From assembly GCA_964057225.1 (NCBI GenBank), contig OZ059897.1:9982001-10046000 (forward strand): DNA of 64,000 nt, read 5' to 3'. Position 1 is the stretch's first letter. The number at the start of each line of letters is the position of its first letter. The translations under genes were made by a program, and so were the position numbers. Positions 28,653 through 39,954 of this stretch are shown here, piece after piece. The DNA comes from Auanema rhodensis (taxonomy: Eukaryota > Animalia > Nematoda). Under the pieces are notes generated by a model. The model saw only the letters and a list, made by a program, of their open reading frames with translations. It was not told the DNA's origin and made no database searches.

Positions 28653-31600
28653 ATGGATGGAATGTGTTTCATCCGGTCGGGTGAAGAACCCTACATGCAA
28701 TTAGATAGATTACAACTTAGAAATTATTTTCCTCATGAAATAGAGAAATTGAGTGTTATACGTGTAACTCAAACGAAAACCTTTGACGAGGTAAAATATT
28801 TTTTTTACTAAGTTTTGATAATATATAATAACTTTAGATTGGTCATCCAGTCAAAGGAGGTTTGTACGATCCTGCTTTAGGTCCTCGAGGAAATGATAGA
28901 TGCGAAACTTGCCATCAATATGATGTTCACTGCCCTGGTTTATATTAAATTTTGTAGCTCTGTTAACAAAATATTTTCAGGTCATATCGGTCATATTAAG
29001 TTAGATGTTCCTGTTTTCAACCCAGTATTATATAGTTTCACGTTAAATGTGTGGATTTATCTTTCTTTATTTGTGCATATATGTTTCTTTTCAGTTGTTC
29101 AAAGGATCATGTGTGCAATGCCATAGACTTACGTGTAATGCTGACGGTTTAACAGCTAAAGTTTTCTTAGCACAATTGAGGTAGAAAAAATTCCAATGAA
29201 CAAAATATGTGTATTATTTAGATGTTTTGAATTGGGTGTACCTCACCTTATTCCTGTTGTTGCCTCGGCGTATAAGGACAAGCTAAGTAATATGGATGGT
29301 ATGAACCTCTTTCGTTGCACATATCCTCATTAAATTTGCAGTTTCTGACAACATGACCATTGAAGAAGAGATGCAACTGTTAGCTGAAGTTGATAAAATG
29401 ATTACTGATTATGTGGGTATACTATTGTAAATGCCAGTACTAAATATTTCTAGGTCGAAAAGCCATTGTCTGAATTGAAATGTGGTGTTCCGGATAAAAA
29501 TACTATTGACTTGAAGAAAGAAATAATGACAGAGTTTTTGAGAGGATCATTGGTATTTTTTTTAGTCTTGATTAATTAAACATATTTTTTCGTTTTAGTT
29601 CAGAAGACGAGAAAAATGTCCACTTTGTGGCGGCAAGAATGGCAAACTTACTAACGATCAAGCTAGATGTATTATTCTTAACTTTGCATCTGCTGCTAAA
29701 TCCAAAATTAAGACAACGAAAAAAGTTTGTCTATTTTTGTTGAGATTGTCTATAATTTATAGTTTTAGCCAAATATGTATAGAGATGAATTTGAAGTAGA
29801 AGAATCTGAAGAAGAATCTGATAAAGAAGGTATATTGAGAGAAAGTTTCTACTTTATTTTATCTGTATTTAGTTGATCTTGAAAAAATTGGTTACGGAGG
29901 AATTGATGTTTCTGAAGGTAGTTTAGATCAACAAATGATGGCTGTTCGAAGAGGAGCTTGTGATAAGGTTTTATACAAGATTTTATCAAAGTTAATTTTT
30001 ATTTTAAGTTGGCTTGGCGTGCTGCTGAGGTTCGTGAACACTTCCGGTTATTGTTCAAAAATGATGGAAGATTCCTTATGAAAGTATTTCCTTTTCTTTG
30101 CGAAGAGAATTCTGTAGGCTTTCTCTCATATAGCTTATCATTTTTTGTTTATTTGTAGTCTAACATTTGTCCATTGGATGGACTTTTCTCTGAATTAATT
30201 GTTGTTCCTCCTACTAAGTTCCGTCCAATTCGCTTCTTCAAAGGATCTAATTATGAAGATCCTCAAACCGTTAATCTTAGAAATTTGTTGGAAGCGGCAG
30301 AAACCATCAAAGTACGCCTATAGGTTATGATGGTTAATTACAGAATATATTATTTAAGGCTATTGTTCTTGTTATGAAAGGAGACAAATCTTCTGCTTTA
30401 CTTGAGTTGATTGCTCATAAAGTTCACGGAAAGACAATTAATGCTAAAATGCATAATGCTTATGTCTTCTTACAAAGAAAGATGAATGCTATCTTCGATG
30501 AGGTATTTATCTTTATATAAATATTTTACTACTACTACTCTATTCTTAGGATCTGGAAAAGGGCATGGACAGTACGACCATTCCTGGTATCAAACAGGTT
30601 TTGGAGAAAAAACAAGGACTTTTCCGAATGAATATGATGGGAAAACGTGTAAACTTTGCTTGCAGGTAAATAAAAAAGTATCTAATCTCTAATCATGTTA
30701 TGATTCAGATCTGTTATTACTCCTGATCCTTACTTGGACATTGACGAAATTGGTATTCCTGAGGTGTTTGCTAAAAAACTAACGTTTTCTGAACCTGTGA
30801 ATGTTTATAACCTACAATATCTACGAAAATTAGTCAAAAATGGTAGTGAAAACCACCCGGGGTACGTAAATAGTGAGAAGGGAATTATATAATTATCTTA
30901 TTTTTAGAGCTAACTTTGTATATAATTCTTCTCAAAAGAAAATTATCTTACAAGATGATTACAAAGAGCTGAGAAATGTTTCAAAGTCTTTGCAACCAGC
31001 TAATGCGGATCACATAAAAGGTCCGATGAGAGTTCTTCGTCATTTGAGAAATGGAGATATGATGATGATGAATCGTCAACCATCTCTTCACAAACCCTCT
31101 ATTATGGGTCACAGATGCCGTGTTTTGAAGGGACAACGAGCTTTGAGAATGAACTACGCTCCATGTAAAGCTTATAACGCTGATTTCGACGGAGATGAAA
31201 TGAATGGCCATCTTGTGCAATCATATATCGCTCAATCTGAAGTTGCTGACATAGGTATCTTTCGTCACATTAATTCTTCTGAGTACCCGCTTGTTTCAGC
31301 TGACGTTGGAAGTAATCTCTTGGTACCAAAGGATGCTACCCCACTTCTTGGTTTAATTCAAGATCACGTAGTTTCTGGTGTGCTTTTAACTCTTCGAGGG
31401 AGATTCCTCAACAAGGTTAAAATTATTCTTTTAACATTTTTTATTGGTTTGCTATAGGAAGATTTTATGCACCTTGTTCTTGCTTCCTTCGCTCATCATA
31501 CGGATAGGATCGAAATTCCTCCACCTTGTATGATTTTGCCACAACAACTATGGAGTGGAAAACAAGTATATATTATCCTTCTACATCTAATCTATCTATT

Positions 31601-34600
31601 ACTTTTAAGGTTATATCTTGTATCTTGAAGAATTGTATTCCTGCTGGAAAACCTTTAATCAATCTCAATGGCAAGGCGAAAACACCCTTGTCTTGCTGGA
31701 AGGTTCGCGGTTTTCCTGAGCCACAATTCGACATGAGTGAATCCCAAGTTATCTTTAGGTGAATATTTTCCAATTTATTGATAATTAATTTTCTTTCTTT
31801 CTTTTCAGAGAAGGAGAACTACTTGTAGGAGTTTTGGATAAGGCTCATTATGGTGCAACACAGTTTGGTCTTGCTCATTGTTGTTTCGAGCTCTATGGAC
31901 CTAAGATTGGCGTTAAAGTTCTTTCATGTTTCTCCAGATTGTTTACTACTTATTTACAAGTTAGATTAGTTTTGTTATCTTTGTTTAAGCAAAGATATTT
32001 CAGTTCCATGGTTTCACCTTAGGAGTAGCTGATATTTTAATTAGACCAGAAGCTGATGAGGACAGAACTAAACAAGTTTTAGAAAGCAGAACTATCGGAG
32101 ATCAAGTAATTGACTGTTTATAGAGTTCATTTTAACGTTTCTATATAGGTTACTATCAAAACATTCAATCTCAAAGAAAATGCTTCACAAGATGAGATTA
32201 AACATGCTCTTGCTTCCGCATATAACAATCCAGCTGGTCAAGGAACTGATGTGAAAATGCTTGATTATGGAATGAAACAAGGCGTTGCTAAATATAACGA
32301 TGCTATCATCAAGTATGTTATTGTTTATGCATCAAGTTGTTCATGGTCGTATTGTTTAGATCTTGTGTTCCTTCTGGTCTCATTCGTTCATTCCCAGAAA
32401 ATGCTCTCCAACTTATGATCCAATCAGGAGCTAAGGGATCTTCTGTTAATGCTATACAGGTACTTATTAGCCACCTATTTTTGAAAATCTTTTCTGTTTT
32501 CCGATTTCTTGCTGTCTTGGTCAAATCGAGTTGGAAGGTAAGCGTATGGCTGTAACCATTGCTGGACGTACTCTACCTTCTTTCAAGTATGTTTAGAAAC
32601 CAAATACGGTTTCGAGTTTTTTTTTTTAGATCTTTCGATTCTTCACCGAGAGCCGGAGGTTATATTGATCAACGTTTCTTAACTGGTATAAATCCTCAGG
32701 AATTATTCTTTCACACAATGGCAGGAAGAGAAGTTAGAATGTTTAATAATTCCTTCTTTAACGTGATCTTAAGGGTCTTATTGATACTGCTGTTAAAACA
32801 TCCAGATCTGGATATCTTCAAAGATGTATTATCAAGCATCTTGAAGGCATCAAAGTTCATTATGATTCTACTGTCAGAGATCATGATGGTTCTATTATTC
32901 AGGTGATTCATTTTAAAAGTGTGTTGTTTATTACTAAAATTTCAGTTCCGTTATGGAGAAGATGGACTTGATACCTGTAAATCGTCCTTTTTGTCTACCA
33001 AAACTTTCAAATTTTTGGAAGATAATCTGGATGCTGCTATGAGTTGTAAGCCCGGCAATGTCAGAGATAGGGAGTATGGTGTAGTCGAAGCTGAGAAACA
33101 GTATTACAAAATACAAAAGTGGAGAAGAAAAAGAGAGAAAAAAGGAATAACGGGAAAAACTTATCAATCCGGATTCACTGAATTCTCATACGAACATCTA
33201 GGTAAAAACAAATTTATAATTCTTTATTGTTTTCTTTTTTTAGGAATGGACAAGAGCTCTATTATTGCTCTATGGTTGGAACTTTCGCCTGAAGAGAAAA
33301 AAGAATATGAAAAGAGAGCCCCTAGCAGGTGTCCAACTGCTGTAGATGAGGTGAGACTTAAACCATTTTGTTTAAGTTTGTTTTTTTAAGAAATTCAATC
33401 TTATGCGTACTCTTGGTGCTTTGCCCGAGAAAACTCTTGATATTATCAATGACTACGTTGGTGATAATGATAATATGAAACATGTATTATTCTGGAAAGG
33501 TAGATACGTTAAACTGAAGCATTGTACTCATTCAAATTAAATTAGGTATGCAATCTATTGCTAGCCCCGGAGAAAATGTTGGATTACTTGCTGCTCAATC
33601 TATTGGAGAGCCTTCAACTCAGATGACACTCAATACTTTCCATTTCGCCGGTAGAGGAGAAATGAACGTTACGCTTGGTATTCCACGTTTAAGAGAAATT
33701 CTTATGACTGCTTCCAAAAATATTGCGACACCTAGTGCACAAGTATGTTGCTACTTACTCATTTGTTGAATTACAATAATTATCTCCAGATTGCTGTAAT
33801 CCCTGGTACATCTCGCGAGAAAATTGACAGAATCAAGCAAGATTTGGATAGAGTTTATCTTAAAGACGTTCTTCGTAACTTTACCCTCGAAGATAGAATA
33901 AATCTAAGCAATGGGTAAGTCACCCTTCCTGTTACACTTTAAAAATATTGGCTTTGCAGTGAACGTTGGAGAAGATACATCCTTCGTCTGGAAATTTTAC
34001 CTGCTCAAAAAAGAGAAAAAGGAGCTCAGCATTTGAAACGACGAAGAATTATGCGAGAAGTTGGAATACTTTAAATATTTTTCATAACTCTGATCCTTTA
34101 GATGGAAAAACGCTTCTTTAAATTGATTGCTAAAACCATAGAGAATAAATTGAAGACTATAGCAAACTATCAGCAAGTACAAACTAAGAAAATGCGTCAA
34201 GGAAATCTAATTGCTGGAATAGGAAATGATGTTCCAGATGCTCGTCAAAGGTATCTGTGAAAAAAATGTTTCGATCAGTAATAAACCATTCATAGAAGAC
34301 GTATTGATGACGGAGCTTCTTCCGACGAGGAAGCTGATGGTGGTAATGATGCCGATGCTGGTGAGAAGAGGCTTCATAATCGACACAAGTTAGTTTCATA
34401 TCTATTTCTTTACATGTTTTTGTGATGTTCAGTGACGAAGCTGCCGATTATGAAGGAGAAGAAGAAGATAGAGGTGCTGTCGAAGAGGAAGTACCAGAAA
34501 TTCCAGAAGATGAAGAGAACGATGACGAATATGATCAAGAATCTGAAGGAGAAGATACACCAGAATCTGGACCAGTAGATGAAACTTCCAATCCTGATTT

Positions 34601-36221
34601 ACGTATTCGTGTAAGTCATTCAATTATTTGTTCAGCTTAATGATATATCATTGTAGCAAGTTCTTCAATCTGCTGGATACGTCGTAGAGTATGAATTTGA
34701 TGTTCAAAAAGATAGATGGTGTCAAGTTGTTTTCCAAACACCCTTGAGCAGTAAGACCAAGCTAGACATGTCAGCGATTATTGATAAGTTAGTGAAACAT
34801 TTGTTGAACATACTAATCCTTTCATGTTTATAGGGAAATTGAGAACTTTATTGTTCATCAAACTCCAGGTATTGAGAGGTGCGTAGAAAGTGTACAAAAC
34901 AAAAACGGTGTTGATGTGACGTACATTCAAACACAAGGTGTCAATCTTCAGGTAAGTACAACTTTGTTATCAATTATTCAGAACAATTTTATTTTTAGGC
35001 TCTTTTCCGGTATTCAAATTGGCTGGATGTTAATAGTGTTTACTCTAACGATTTGAATTTGGTGTTGAACCAGTATGGTGTTGAGGCTTGTGCTAAAGCC
35101 ATCGTCACTGTGAGTTTATGTCTTCCATTCGCGAGTATTCTCCACCAAATGAATGTTTCAAAAACGATAATTCATGTTTTCCTCCACAATGCTTTGTTTT
35201 CGTAGTATAGCCATTGAAAACTTAGGAGATACGGTACTTTCTGTTTAAGTCTTCTGTGTTTTTCCGTATGCTACTGTAAACTCTCTAAGTTCTTTTTCTT
35301 CTGTTTCTAGTTGTTTTTCCTACTATTTCGTAACCATGTTACTGCTGCTTACAACAGAGAGCCATACGAAGCGGGGGTTGTCTATTGGTCTTTCTACGTC
35401 ATGAAACCCTGTTCCCAATTCATCAGCAATCAGCTATATCATTATTAATAATCTGATAGACATTTTTCCAAGATCAAAATGTTTAGTGATATTCGTTTAA
35501 ATTTTGGACGCTCCGATCAAAAACTTTTCTAATTTCTTTGAACCCAAACGTTTTACCGTGGAAAAATGCGTTGCAAAAAATTGATTAAAACTAGTGGAAT
35601 GAAACTTATATTTCTATATTTTAGGAAATGAATAATGTGTTCGGAGTGTATGGTATTGAGGTATCAAAGAGACATTTGTCATTGACCGCCGATTACATGA
35701 CGTTCACTGGACGTATAGCACCATTCAATCGCGGTGCCATGTCCTCCAGTGCTTCTCCGCTACAGAAGATGACATTCGAAACAACGGTTGCGTTCTTACG
35801 TGAATCTCTATTACATGGTACGTGAAAAAGTATTTGAACTCAAAAGAAAAGTTACACTGTAATTGACATTCTTATGACTCCGATATATACATGGTTGATC
35901 AATTAAATTAGTGATTTGTCACAAATGAATCTATTAATATAGATTCATGAACAAGAAATAGAATTATAAAAAATGTGATCAGGGAACATTAGTTATTTTC
36001 GTTATACTATTTTTAGCCAAACACAAAGACATGGAAGATATTTATTAAACTTTGTTTATCATGGCGTCATATCTAGGATTGTAAATGTTCTAAATGATAT
36101 ATTAATTTCAGGAGAAGAAGACTATTTGTCATCACCTTCAGCTCGTTTAGTTGTTGGTAGCTTGAGTCAAGGAGGTACAGGATCATTCGATATCCTTTTT
36201 GATATGGATTACTCTTCGTAG
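28653..36221 (+). CDS. rpoa-1: DNA-directed RNA polymerase I largest subunit (RPA1/RPA190), about 35 exons
   Basis: [10 protein letters not shown], CxxC...HCPGHIGHI zinc site, [37 protein letters not shown], catalytic [63 protein letters not shown] and an acidic expander-like loop. No CTD heptads. Confidence 0.97.
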
Positions 36222-36449
36222 AGGATAACTTTTTCATTTTGTTGTTATTTGTTGTTATCTGTTGTTGTTGTTGAATCCTTTATAACAGAATTTACTCAAA
36301 AGTTTTGACTGTAGTTGCTCGAAAGTAGGAACATCTTGAAACTGTTTCATGTTGTTGTCTGTTATGTATGTCTGTTTTGTGATATTCGTTACAGCTATTG
36401 TTTTTGTTATCTATTTAGTTTTAAATGATGATTGTTGACAAGCATTTAG

Positions 36450-36970
36450 ATAAATATACTATTTATTATATGTACATGTAGGGGGTACTAGCACCAAATA
36501 TGGTTAAAGCTCGATTTAGAGAACCACTTTATGAAAGCAATTTAAAAGTGACAGCCGAGTCGTTGATAGAGTTGATCATCTACGGGTTTCACATGACAGA
36601 ATAGCCAGAACGAGCAACGGCATTTGTTCTAAGAGAACTCGTCGAGATCAGCTTTTAACGATGTCTGCATCAGTTGCCGATTTGGTTACTGAAAAAACCA
36701 AACAATAAAAAAAGAAATAACAATAAAATATTAAAATGAAATAAAACAAAAAAAAAGAATTAAAATACTTACGTTGAGCACAATCGCTCTCGACCAATGG
36801 TAGAGAAACGATGAGGTTTCCTTTGATAAGAAGCCCATTCGAGGGTATCTCTTGTAGGATGAATAATACTAATCATAGTAATAACTTGCGAATATCTCTT
36901 AGTTTGTAAGAATACAGATAAATATTATCTCAATATTTATCGAGAAAGAGTTCTTTTTAATAGAGGCTAA
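36450..36970 (-). ncRNA. Spliced Pol II transcript lacking a long ORF (lncRNA, pri-miRNA or micropeptide gene)
   Basis: On the minus strand: TATA box near 36993-37000, intron 36772-36689 (GTAAGT...TTTTTTCAG), AATAAA at 36467-36462. Exons are GC-richer than the flanks. Longest spliced ORF is 40 codons. Ends are approximate. Confidence 0.55.
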
Positions 36971-36989
36971 CCGGGTCCTTTCAGCCAAC

Positions 36990-37120
36990 TGCCTTATATA
37001 TGGGTAGGCGACTCCGCCCCTACGCGCTTCCGAGCACTTGTACGGCCGTCCTATTGCACCCGACACCGTTGTCTATGACGTGAGAGACCAGCCGGGCATT
37101 GGGCCAAGTCCCGCCCTGAG
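36990..37120 (-). promoter_or_regulatory. GC-rich core promoter
   Basis: Read on the minus strand: GGGCGGGA and GGGGCGGAG GC boxes, CCAAT, TCACGTCA (CRE/E-box-like) and TATATAAG, in the order expected for a promoter. Confidence 0.65.
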
Positions 37121-39954
37121 AATCATCGTCATCTTCCAACGACTTACATGAAGAACTAGGGAGAACTAAAAGAGAAAGCCAAGTAAGAGAATTAAGAGAA
37201 AAACAGAAAGAAAGAGAAAAAAAAGAAGAGGAACTACTTAGGAATACTGTAGAGAAATTTTGCAGCTACAGCTATTGCAGACAGTGGAGATGAAACAATA
37301 ATCAGAAATATTTGAGTGTTTTCATGCTAATATCCAGTTCAGACATAGTAGTTTACTTCTACCAAATGTTGAAATATCTGTTTTCACTCATTTTCAGGTT
37401 AGACGATATCACAACGAGCCATGGTTTATAATCATGATCAACCTACTCACACTTTCCAATTTTGAACTTTGCCATTCTAGTCAAATTATCTTATCAAGAC
37501 ACAGCATGGCTTATTTGGCTTTTAATATTATTTGGCAAATGATTATTCAACACAACCCTTAGATATTAATGTTCCGATACGCAAGCAAAGAGGAAGGCCT
37601 TGAACCTGAAGCATAGCCTTACAACCAAATGGGTTTGGGTCCCATTTAGTAACTAATATGGTCTAATTTTCTGAACATGATGACGTTTGAAGTGCAGCAG
37701 ATCAGAATCTTTTATGTTATGCTAAACAAGATTTCTGACGAATCTAATGAATTTCAGATCTTCAGGAACTAAAAAGTTCTTGTTCCCCATCTGTTGGTTT
37801 ATGAAAGCCTCTACTGTTAGTAGTACTTTCAAAATACTCTTATCATTTGCTGCTGACGTAGAAAAATATTTTGTACGAACAAAGTTTAAGCTTGAATGAG
37901 ATCAAAGTATCTCGTGTGGTTATGAGTTTTGCGAACATGATACCGTAGCAATAGATTCAAACAAGCTTTACCCTCCTTTCTTACTGCATGTTAACAGTTT
38001 ATAAAAATGTACAGGATATGTATTGTTCACAAAAAAGAACACTAATTGATACAAATGAATCAACTAGCAAATAACACGATAATTTGATAAAAAGAAAAAA
38101 AATTATTATAAATTTCTGAATTTACTAAGATGATCGTCTTTCGTAGTTTTTGATGTGTGCTCTTAGTTAGTTGCTTTGTTTCTCATTCCATTTTTCTACT
38201 GATCATACATGAGCATGTACAACCAATTACCGTATACTTTGCCTAAGACACACGCATGTAGCTACTTCTTTTCTTACTTTTTAATCTTTATTTATCGAAT
38301 TATATTGTATTATTCTGATTATTATTATAACTTTTTTTATATTTTCAATCAATCTCGTCATATTTTAGTCGTAACAGATTACTATGAACCTTCAGAACTA
38401 CTTGATCGAGAAGACTATATACACGTAGAAAGTACTATTGCCCCCGAAGACGTATGCATGTATATGGTCTTTGCAGACATACGTATCCATTATATATGGA
38501 TGGAATTAGATTTTTGCAAAAAAAATCAAAGAAATTCGTTTTCTAGTCATTGAGGAACTGTTCCATTGGTAAAAAGATCTTTTGATTTTCAATTTAAGGA
38601 ATACGGAAAGTAGAAAACCTAACCACACACTTCCCCACTAGTTCATAATCGAATTAACATACTGTCTATCTTTAGGCATATCAGACTTTTCAAATTTGAA
38701 GAAAATTGCCGAAAAATTTTTTAAAGATCGCTGATCAAATTTCTGAATGAACCAGAAATTAAAGGGGGTGGCTATGTGGATATTTCCTATATCGAAGCCA
38801 GGGGGGCCCATAAACTGACGAATTCCTCTGATTTTAATCTAATAGTCTGCTTATAAGTATGACTATTCAGTTTTCGAAATTTCGAATTAATTCTTAAAAT
38901 TTTTTATCGTATAGTAGTGTGGGGAGTGGGGGTCTGTTTATAAGCAAACAACTTAACGATAAAAATGATAAGAGACGTTTAGTAGAAGAGGTTAATTCGT
39001 AGAATACTGTCAGTAAAAAAACTTGATAAAACGGATGAGATTTGGAAAACAAAGGCTGCAATTTTCTTTTGAGTTGTATTCTAGGAACATAGGATGAATC
39101 TATGTTTGTTTCGCAACAATGATTCATTTTGTTTGTTGAAGACTTAGAGAGTCAAACTGATATTATATAATTACTCATTTGTTTGGAGAATTTCGTCGGT
39201 CCTTGTCATCTAGTTGTGATTGAACTTCTACGGCTTACATCATCATCATTATCATCATCAACATTATCGACGTTATTACGGTGATCTCGATCTAACTAAA
39301 GAAATTTTGTTTTATTTGTTTCGTACTGCCAGTTCCTGTTTCTTATTAGACGATTTCGTTCATTGTTAGAAGTTTGTCCGAAATAACTGGCTACAATTAT
39401 CCTCGACCTCTGATGATAATCAGTTTTACTCGTATGGAAGGTTCAGAGCTTACCAGACGACCAGTAACTAGCCAACCTTTAGGCTACCCAGCTTGTTTCT
39501 ACCTTACCTCAAACTGGTAAAACCACTTATTGTATGAATTTACTACGTAACTCATACTAGTTCAAAAATGAAAACATTAAACTTAAAAAGAAAGTTTAAA
39601 AAATGAAAATTCACGAAGTTTCTTTGAGGGGCCATCAGGGAAAGGGAAGAAAAAATGAAATTATATTGTACCAATTTCATCATGTTTCACTGATGCAGAA
39701 AAAAGTTTTATCAATTAGGTGCAGGACAGAGTTTATGTGATCGCTTGTTTTCACAATCACACATACTTTTTTCTTTCTAGGATTTTATACGAAGTATCAC
39801 CTGGTTCAGAAAAGCATTGGTGTTAAATCACCTAGGTGTTTGTTACGTCCAAGAAAACAAGACAGAAAACTTCCGCTGAGATTTAGAAAACGGAATGAGA
39901 GTACAAAACTGATTGTTGGAATTTGTTTGAATGGAGAAGAAAAGAAGAAAGGAA

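What the first reader, a model, noticed from the sequence alone, without database searches (positions are those of the whole stretch)
32460..32503. GT-CG intron (acceptor TTTTCCG) required inside the conserved core of RNA polymerase I
Seen: the exon ends ...AAT GCT ATA CAG, then 44 nt starting GTACTT and ending TTTTCCG, then ATT TCT TGC TGT CTT GGT CAA ATC GAG TTG GAA GGT. Known: RPA1 has the motif NxxQIS[C]xLGQxELEG. Retaining 44 nt shifts the frame, the only internal AG would leave an 11-nt intron, and the next AG deletes ISCCLGQIE. Inference: an essential gene is spliced at a CG 3' site, i.e. the nematode TTTTCAG consensus with the A replaced. This is the best-constrained of three such cases.
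Basis: partly seen in the sequence, partly recalled or inferred. Interest (0 to 1): 0.85.

Follow-up and report, generated by a model that had tools for sequence, protein, structure and literature searches.

The report
Worm intron spliced at CG
A 44-base intron in this nematode's essential RNA polymerase I gene ends in CG instead of the near-universal AG, yet transcript assemblies show it is cut out exactly, so the worm's ordinary splicing machinery tolerates a broken end signal.

Summary
Window 32460-32503 is a 44-nt intron (GTACTT...TTTTCCG) in rpoa-1, the gene for RPA1, the largest subunit of RNA polymerase I. The flanking exons align without a gap to human RPA1 residues 879-911 and 912-938, so only a 32459|32504 junction keeps the protein intact.

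Transcript contigs from two public runs skip exactly these 44 bases. All 14 other listed junctions of the gene are GT..AG. A genomic contig from another study spans the site with no difference, so the C at 32502 is not an assembly error.

The closest RPA1 found belongs to Auanema sp. JU1783. The intron sits at the same Q|I position and ends in AG in JU1783, Mesorhabditis belari, Pristionchus pacificus and Brugia malayi. CG is therefore a derived change at position -2. The acceptor TTTTCCG/A matches the C. elegans octamer UUUUCAG/R at 7 of 8 positions.

The likely mechanism, which is inferred, is that the U-tract and the short intron fix the site and the retained final G permits exon ligation.

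C. elegans is already known to tolerate non-AG acceptors, so this is a new natural member of a known kind. The scan has noted the same phenomenon many times elsewhere in this genome.

The parts
32460..32503 (+). 44-nt GT..CG intron of rpoa-1 (GTACTT...TTTTCCG)
   Evidence: Sequence. Skipped exactly in transcript contigs of runs X10 and X12. The same phase-0 Q|I intron position ends in AG in four other nematodes.
32497..32504 (+). Acceptor octamer TTTTCCG/A, which matches the C. elegans UUUUCAG/R motif at 7 of 8 positions; only position -2 (32502, C) departs from it
   Evidence: for the sequence. The octamer and the importance of the -5 U are taken from PMC4889670.
32360..32459 (+). Upstream exon, ending ...[11 protein letters not shown]
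   Evidence: human RPA1 879-911. The acceptor of the preceding intron lies at 32359.
32504..32586 (+). Downstream exon, starting [14 protein letters not shown]
   Evidence: human RPA1 912-938, yeast RPA190 943-970. The next donor is at 32587.
32529..32530 (+). The next AG downstream. It is not used in the assembled transcripts; using it would delete ISCCLGQIE in frame.
28653..36218 (+). rpoa-1 (RNA polymerase I largest subunit) gene, minimal extent, with many 40-52-nt introns
   Evidence: best PDB matches are RPA1; residue 1 of the JU1783 protein aligns at the ATG at 28653, and the last coding match ends at 36218; 5380-nt transcript contig.

Best explanation
This is a genuine, constitutively removed major-spliceosome (U2-type) intron of the essential gene rpoa-1. 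Its 3' terminal dinucleotide has changed from the ancestral AG to CG, and it is still excised at exactly the ancestral position.

Shown here: the DNA carries C at position -2. Assembled transcripts join 32459 to 32504. The orthologous intron ends in AG in the closest relative found and in three more distant nematodes.

Inferred: the 3' splice site is fixed mainly by the pyrimidine octamer directly next to it. That octamer, UUUUCCG/A, matches the C. elegans U2AF binding motif UUUUCAG/R at 7 of 8 positions, including the critical -5 U, the -3 C and the +1 purine. The tight geometry of a 44-nt intron helps as well: candidate branch adenosines at 32484-32487 lie about 16-19 nt upstream. The retained last G can still make the first-G/last-G contact needed for exon ligation, so the lost contact of A(-2) is tolerated.

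The spliceosome therefore does not scan on to the next AG 27 nt downstream. The A-to-C change behaves as a tolerated, probably slightly deleterious or neutral substitution, not as a regulatory device.
For: -: contigs of X10 (5380 nt) and X12 (3482 nt) skip 44 nt at 32458|32503, with one ambiguous G. The exons show 0 other letters. The 14 other listed joints are GT..AG. No intron-retaining contig was laid.
- the DNA contig of X8 covers 31508-32867 with 0 differences, and X9 has no variant rows.
- six DNA runs from two studies (P1, P2) hold 100% of the sampled words.
- gapless alignment to human RPA1 at residues 911|912.
- the same intron position is GT..AG in Auanema sp. JU1783 (38 nt), Mesorhabditis belari (123 nt), P. 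pacificus (231 nt) and Brugia malayi (255 nt). The intron is absent in C. briggsae.
- 19 of 19 intron positions are shared with JU1783. All 19 end in AG there; here 18 end in AG and one in CG.
- the octamer is TTTTCCGA.
- Literature: C. elegans splices mutated non-AG acceptors at the normal site, and TTTC is sufficient after AG is changed to AA (Aroian 1993 and Zhang & Blumenthal 1996, as cited in PMC4484395, and PMC10946897). U2AF binds the octamer and the -5 U is critical (PMC4889670).
Against: - The RNA evidence is assembled contigs, not raw reads. Splicing efficiency, intron retention and minor isoforms (for example use of the AG at 32529-30) cannot be measured.
- The two runs are labelled RNA only by guess. 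That they are RNA follows from all introns being skipped and no intronic sequence being present.
- Contigs drop rare variants, so a minor A allele cannot be strictly excluded. The X9 contig across 32502 is not among the listed pieces.
- The branch point, U2AF binding and the second-step contacts were not tested in any way.
- Most other acceptors of this gene are weak matches to the octamer, so octamer-driven recognition may matter less in this species than in C. elegans.
Confidence: 0.85

Rival explanations
1. Lineage-specific relaxation. This species, or the genus, has changed its 3' splice-site machinery (U2AF small subunit, or second-step factors such as Prp8, Prp18 or Slu7) so that position -2 is no longer read. 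Non-AG acceptors then accumulate across the genome. On this view the CG site is not merely tolerated by a generic nematode spliceosome.
For: - Unchecked notes of this scan report many GT-CG, GT-TG and GT-AT introns in other parts of this genome. Some follow-ups report exact excision in RNA.
- Two more candidates lie in this window.
- Tunicates with mostly non-canonical introns have duplicated, divergent U2AF subunits (PMC13326754).
Against: - In the roughly 10 kb I could check myself (about 30 introns of rpoa-1 and the neighbouring aminotransferase gene with a clear boundary), only one intron is non-AG.
- Eighteen of the 19 introns compared with the relative keep AG, so AG is still strongly preferred.
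- No splicing-factor gene of this species could be examined.
- C. elegans already tolerates such sites without any special machinery.
Confidence: 0.3
2. Assembly or sequencing error: the true base at 32502 is A and the intron is an ordinary TTTTCAG intron.
Against: -: the DNA contig of run X8 (study P3) spans 31508-32867 with 0 differences. Run X9 (study P2, not flagged as a possible source of the assembly) has depth in both bins and no other-letter rows.
- runs of three studies hold 97-100% of the sampled words.
Confidence: 0.02
3. Polymorphism: an AG allele, or a near-identical second copy, supplies the spliced mRNA, while the CG allele is unspliced and degraded.
For: Contigs cannot show minor alleles. 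X9 contigs break near 32440 and 32611, which could reflect variation or repeats.
Against: - No variant contig was found at the site in either DNA run (table 3).
- The X8 contig runs through it unbranched.
- The transcript exons are identical to this copy.
- An essential gene with a dead allele fixed in several independent samples is unlikely.
- Published Auanema rhodense lines are inbred (bioRxiv 10.64898/2026.08.27.747507), but the species identity of the window is not established.
Confidence: 0.05
4. The boundaries are shifted by one base (intron 32459-32502, GG..CC), or the junction is a reverse-transcriptase template-switch artefact.
For: One search prints the joint as 32458|32503 'GG..CC' with one letter that fits either side.
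Against: - Placing the joint one base later gives GT at the 5' end and puts the intron exactly between the CAG and ATT codons, where four other nematodes have it.
- One shared base is too little for template switching.
- The junction is the only one that gives an intact RPA1, and it is seen in two runs.
Confidence: 0.02

Closest known systems
C. elegans mutant acceptors that splice without AG (Aroian et al. 1993, Mol Cell Biol 13:626; Zhang & Blumenthal 1996, RNA 2:380; known here through PMC4484395 and PMC10946897)
   Same: A short nematode intron with the U-rich tract intact and the terminal AG destroyed is still spliced at the normal position. TTTC is sufficient to direct splicing.
   Different: Those are induced or engineered mutations, chiefly of the last G (AG to AA or AC), usually with reduced function. 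Here the change is natural, apparently fixed, at position -2 (AG to CG), and lies in an essential housekeeping gene.
Natural non-AG alternative acceptors in the C. elegans germline: par-4 (TG), ubxn-6 (AT), icd-2 (GG) (Ragle et al. 2015, PMC4484395)
   Same: Wild-type nematode transcripts spliced at non-AG dinucleotides and validated by RNA.
   Different: Those are proximal alternative sites next to a strong AG site and are tissue-specific. This one is the only productive acceptor of a constitutive intron, with no AG within 26 nt.
Annotated GT-CG introns of Drosophila melanogaster (FlyBase 'Rule-Benders', PMC4528330: 8 GT-CG introns, all with RNA-seq support)
   Same: The same dinucleotide pair, differing from GT-AG by one base, handled by the major spliceosome.
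   Different: All eight fly cases have a similar alternative splice nearby. The worm intron has no canonical alternative.
Lineage-wide non-canonical splicing in larvacean tunicates with divergent U2AF paralogues (PMC13326754)
   Same: Non-AG 3' ends recognised in vivo. This is a possible model if the worm's machinery has changed.
   Different: In those tunicates 95% of introns are non-canonical and the U2AF genes are duplicated. Here about 1 intron in 30 checked is non-AG, and no U2AF data exist.
Annotation-level reports of frequent non-canonical sites in plant-parasitic nematodes (Meloidogyne graminicola 5.3%, PMC7593179)
   Same: An AT-rich nematode genome with very short introns, and a suggestion of flexible splice-site recognition.
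   Different: That report rests on gene prediction alone and lists no validated non-AG acceptors. The organism here is a clade V rhabditid, not a tylenchid.

Membership tests
U2-type (major spliceosome) short nematode intron | 5' end GU within an AG|GURAGU-like donor | tested here: met
   The donor is CAG|GTACTT: positions -2 to +3 fit and +4 to +6 do not. Other donors of the gene are similarly loose.
U2-type (major spliceosome) short nematode intron | 3' terminal AG | tested here: not met
   The intron ends in CG. C at 32502 is present in DNA contigs of independent runs.
U2-type (major spliceosome) short nematode intron | Pyrimidine-rich octamer directly next to the 3' splice site (UUUUCAG/R) | tested here: met
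   TTTTCCG/A matches at 7 of 8 positions, including the -5 U, -3 C and +1 A (motif from PMC4889670).
U2-type (major spliceosome) short nematode intron | Exact excision in mature RNA, and a length within the genome's modal intron class | tested here: met
   One search shows a skip of 44 nt in two runs. The other introns of the gene are 40-50 nt.
U2-type (major spliceosome) short nematode intron | Homologous in position to canonical introns of relatives | tested here: met
   the same phase-0 Q|I position is GT..AG in four nematodes.
U12-type (minor spliceosome) intron | Donor /RTATCCTT and branch site TCCTTAAC near the 3' end | tested here: not met
   The donor is GTACTTAT and the 44 nt contain no TCCTTAAC-like motif.
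Nematode AG-independent 3' splice-site use (Aroian 1993 type) | Non-AG terminus, U-tract kept, and splicing at the ancestral position rather than at the next AG | tested here: met
Nematode AG-independent 3' splice-site use (Aroian 1993 type) | Dependence on U2AF binding to the octamer | not testable with these tools
   This needs binding assays or U-tract mutagenesis.
Lineage-wide non-canonical splicing system (tunicate type) | A large share of introns non-canonical | tested here: not met
   One of 19 RNA- or orthologue-checked introns of rpoa-1, and about 1 of 30 with the neighbouring gene and the 5' part of rpoa-1.
Lineage-wide non-canonical splicing system (tunicate type) | Duplicated or divergent U2AF subunits | not testable with these tools
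Sequence artefact | The base is not reproduced in independent data | tested here: not met

The most novel reading that the evidence does not exclude
This Auanema-type lineage has lost strict reading of position -2 of the 3' splice site, through a change in the U2AF small subunit or a second-step factor, or through drift in a small, inbreeding population. YG-ending introns (CG, TG) then accumulate at the percent level even in essential genes. That would make it a natural animal model, close to C. elegans, for AG-independent 3' splice-site definition.
Probability: 0.3. Interest if true: 0.7.

Novelty: new member of a known kind. Interest (0 to 1): 0.5.

Why it matters
The terminal AG is close to invariant in eukaryotic introns, and in C. 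elegans it is described as perfectly conserved. This is a natural, constitutive, RNA-supported GT-CG intron with no canonical alternative, in a gene the animal cannot live without, and its ancestral AG state is preserved in relatives. It shows in the wild what C. elegans mutants showed in the laboratory: a short nematode intron can be defined without the A of AG.

In practice, gene predictors that allow only GT/GC-AG will break or mis-frame such genes in this genome. If the many similar notes from other parts of the genome hold up, the species becomes a tractable system for asking what sets the 3' splice site when AG is absent.

Tried and rejected
- Canonical alternatives: every AG within reach gives an 11-nt intron, a frame-preserving 9-residue deletion of the conserved ISCCLGQIE, or a frameshift. 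None appears in the transcript contigs.
- Plant-parasitic nematode origin: I first suspected Meloidogyne because of the AT richness and the paper PMC7593179. This was rejected when the closest RPA1 proteins turned out to be clade V rhabditids, with Auanema sp. JU1783 best.
- Literature: no paper on Auanema splicing or on nematode GT-CG introns was found in the held library. Aroian 1993 itself is not held.
- Automatic screen for introns without any GT/GC..AG solution between conserved blocks: it gave false alarms wherever protein matches ran through short in-frame introns or the phase was not 0. The two flagged aminotransferase introns proved to be canonical by eye. The screen is used only as weak support.
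- Exhaustive path search for the 34611-35624 segment: it timed out, so the junctions there are not resolved.
- Look-ups of the Nippostrongylus and Ancylostoma loci found nothing on record.
- Rfam found nothing in or near the gene.
- In one search the exons were joined inside a local script, only to count stops per frame. No joined sequence was saved or sent to any search tool.

Full report
**The observation**

The exon ends ...AAT GCT ATA CAG at 32459. The next 44 bases, 32460-32503, read GTACTT...TTTTCCG, with C at 32502. The following exon begins ATT TCT TGC TGT at 32504.

From 32460 to 32540, AG dinucleotides start only at three places:
- 32469, which would leave an 11-nt intron;
- 32529, which would give a 71-nt intron and delete ISCCLGQIE;
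- 32536, which would shift the frame.

Reading through the intron shifts the frame and meets a stop.

**The gene and the constraint on the junction**

The gene is the largest subunit of RNA polymerase I. A 176-residue exon stretch has human, S. pombe and yeast RPA1 as its best solved-structure matches, ahead of the Pol II, Pol III and archaeal subunits.

The constraint on the junction is tight. The 33 residues before the intron align end to end with human RPA1 879-911 (E 5e-9). The 28 residues after it align from their first residue with human 912-938 and yeast RPA190 943-970. Only a join of 32459 to 32504 gives a gapless protein.

**Is the C real, and is the junction used?**

One search found 15 public runs that hold this DNA. 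Nine DNA-type runs from three studies hold 97-100% of the sampled words. Four small runs from a fourth study hold 59%, as expected if they carry exons only.

I laid two runs of each kind on 30200-35900. The two 59% runs each give a long contig (5380 and 3482 nt). These contigs match the exons with no differing letter and skip every intron.

At the site they skip 44 bases. The tool prints the joint as 32458|32503, with one base that fits either side. That is the same mRNA as a 32459|32504 join. The other 14 listed joints are all GT..AG, 40-50 nt long. Twelve further joints were not listed. Four of them (33915-34432) could be resolved uniquely as GT..AG from the contig coordinates.

No intron-retaining contig was laid. 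A genomic contig of run X8 (another study) runs from 31508 to 32867 without a difference. Run X9, which is not flagged as a possible source of the assembly, shows depth and no variant. The C is therefore in the DNA, and the transcript is spliced at CG.

Three limits apply:
- These are assembled contigs, so efficiency, minor isoforms and rare alleles cannot be judged.
- The 'RNA' label of the two runs is the tool's guess. It is supported by the complete absence of intron sequence.
- The X9 piece across 32502 is not among the rows shown.

**Which organism, and what was the ancestral state?**

A search of protein representatives with one exon, followed by a search with the Pristionchus protein, gave nematode RPA1 sequences. 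Ranked against the window, Auanema sp. JU1783 is the closest. I did not establish the species.

I fetched five orthologous loci and projected the two flanking exons onto them:

| Species | Intron at the CAG\|AT(T/C/A) position | Ends |
|---|---|---|
| Auanema sp. JU1783 | 38 nt, ...TTTTCTGTTTAG | GT..AG |
| Mesorhabditis belari | 123 nt | GT..AG |
| Pristionchus pacificus | 231 nt | GT..AG |
| Brugia malayi | 255 nt | GT..AG |
| C. briggsae | absent | - |

The intron is therefore old, AG is ancestral, and CG is a derived state of this lineage. This also settles the one-base ambiguity in favour of GT..CG over GG..CC.

Across 19 introns of the gene, every position is shared with JU1783. JU1783 has AG at all 19. 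The window has AG at 18 and CG at one. The two introns share only the U-rich 3' tract. A single A-to-C change from TTTTCAG is the simplest history, but that is inference.

**How it most likely works**

The shown steps are the DNA state, the junction and the ancestry. The rest is inferred from established work on C. elegans:
- The 3' splice site there is an octamer, UUUUCAG/R, that is bound directly by both U2AF subunits, and the -5 U is critical (PMC4889670).
- Mutated acceptors lacking AG are still spliced at the normal place.
- TTTC suffices to direct splicing after AG is changed to AA (Aroian 1993 and Zhang & Blumenthal 1996, as reported in PMC4484395 and PMC10946897).

The acceptor here, TTTTCCG/A, keeps 7 of the 8 octamer positions. 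That is a better match than most AG acceptors of the same gene, such as CTATAG, TTTAAG and AATTAG. The intron also has the modal length.

My reading has three parts. The U-tract, together with the short distance from the A-run at 32484-32487, fixes the site. The retained last G allows the first-G/last-G contact of the second catalytic step (my own knowledge of spliceosome structures, not tested here). The missing A(-2) contact is tolerated. The spliceosome demonstrably does not move on to the AG 27 nt downstream.

**Rivals**

- Assembly error is essentially excluded.
- A hidden AG allele or second copy is unlikely but not strictly excluded by contigs.
- A template-switch artefact is implausible: there is one shared base, two runs agree, and this is the only productive junction.
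- The serious alternative concerns cause, not fact. Is this tolerance generic to nematodes, or has this lineage relaxed its machinery?

Many unchecked notes of this scan list GT-CG, GT-TG and GT-AT introns elsewhere in the genome, and some follow-ups report exact excision. Two more candidates lie in this window on the minus strand, ending ATTTCCG and TTTTCTG. I did not test those.

What I could check myself is small. It covers the roughly 10 kb syntenic with JU1783: rpoa-1 and the aminotransferase gene upstream. It shows about one non-AG intron in 30, so AG remains strongly preferred. No U2AF or second-step factor gene was available to examine.

**Comparison with what is known**

- Non-AG acceptors that work are known from C. 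elegans mutants.
- Three natural germline-specific alternative sites (TG, AT, GG) are known in C. elegans (PMC4484395).
- FlyBase lists eight annotated Drosophila GT-CG introns, all with a similar alternative splice nearby (PMC4528330).
- Tunicates with divergent U2AF have mostly non-canonical introns (PMC13326754).

This case differs in being natural, constitutive, without any canonical alternative, in an essential gene, and with its AG ancestor documented. I found nothing on Auanema splicing in the held literature. I file it as a new member of a known kind, and the scan has seen the same phenomenon before on other DNA of this genome.

All searches used single exons by reference. In one search the exons were joined only inside a local script, to count stops per frame.

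Noticed in passing
window 36106-37155: A 1.05-kb block just past the last clear rpoa-1 coding match aligns to the Auanema sp. JU1783 locus (L001 8511-9530) at 77% nucleotide identity. That is far better than any intron. The one frame translated (36936-37140) carries a stop, and no long ORF lies here on either strand. The JU1783 annotation appears to fuse part of the block to the RPA1 C-terminus. There is no Rfam match.
   Followed up: partly
window 35337-35520: Inside the one long rpoa-1 intron (about 35110-35624, with no transcript-contig depth), a stretch of about 185 nt is conserved with JU1783 in several frames and on both strands. It is probably a conserved non-coding element, such as an intronic small RNA. 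There is no Rfam match.
   Followed up: partly
The sequences are as stated. I tested them neither with reads nor by homology.
   Followed up: no
window 25300-47200 versus L008: Gene order (class-V aminotransferase-like gene, rpoa-1, globin-like gene on the minus strand) is shared with the Auanema sp. JU1783 contig. Exons are 55-100% identical in protein, while introns are unalignable apart from their U-rich ends.
   Followed up: partly
window 31255-31299: This 45-nt intron has no in-frame stop, so the raw ORF 30873-31457 reads through it and shows a 15-residue 'insert' relative to human RPA1. Transcript contigs show that it is spliced out.
   Followed up: yes
window 31171-31205: DNA and RNA contigs of all four runs branch here into unlike sequence. 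The stretch encodes part of the catalytic [10 protein letters not shown] motif, so an identical 31-mer is probably shared with a paralogous polymerase gene.
   Followed up: no
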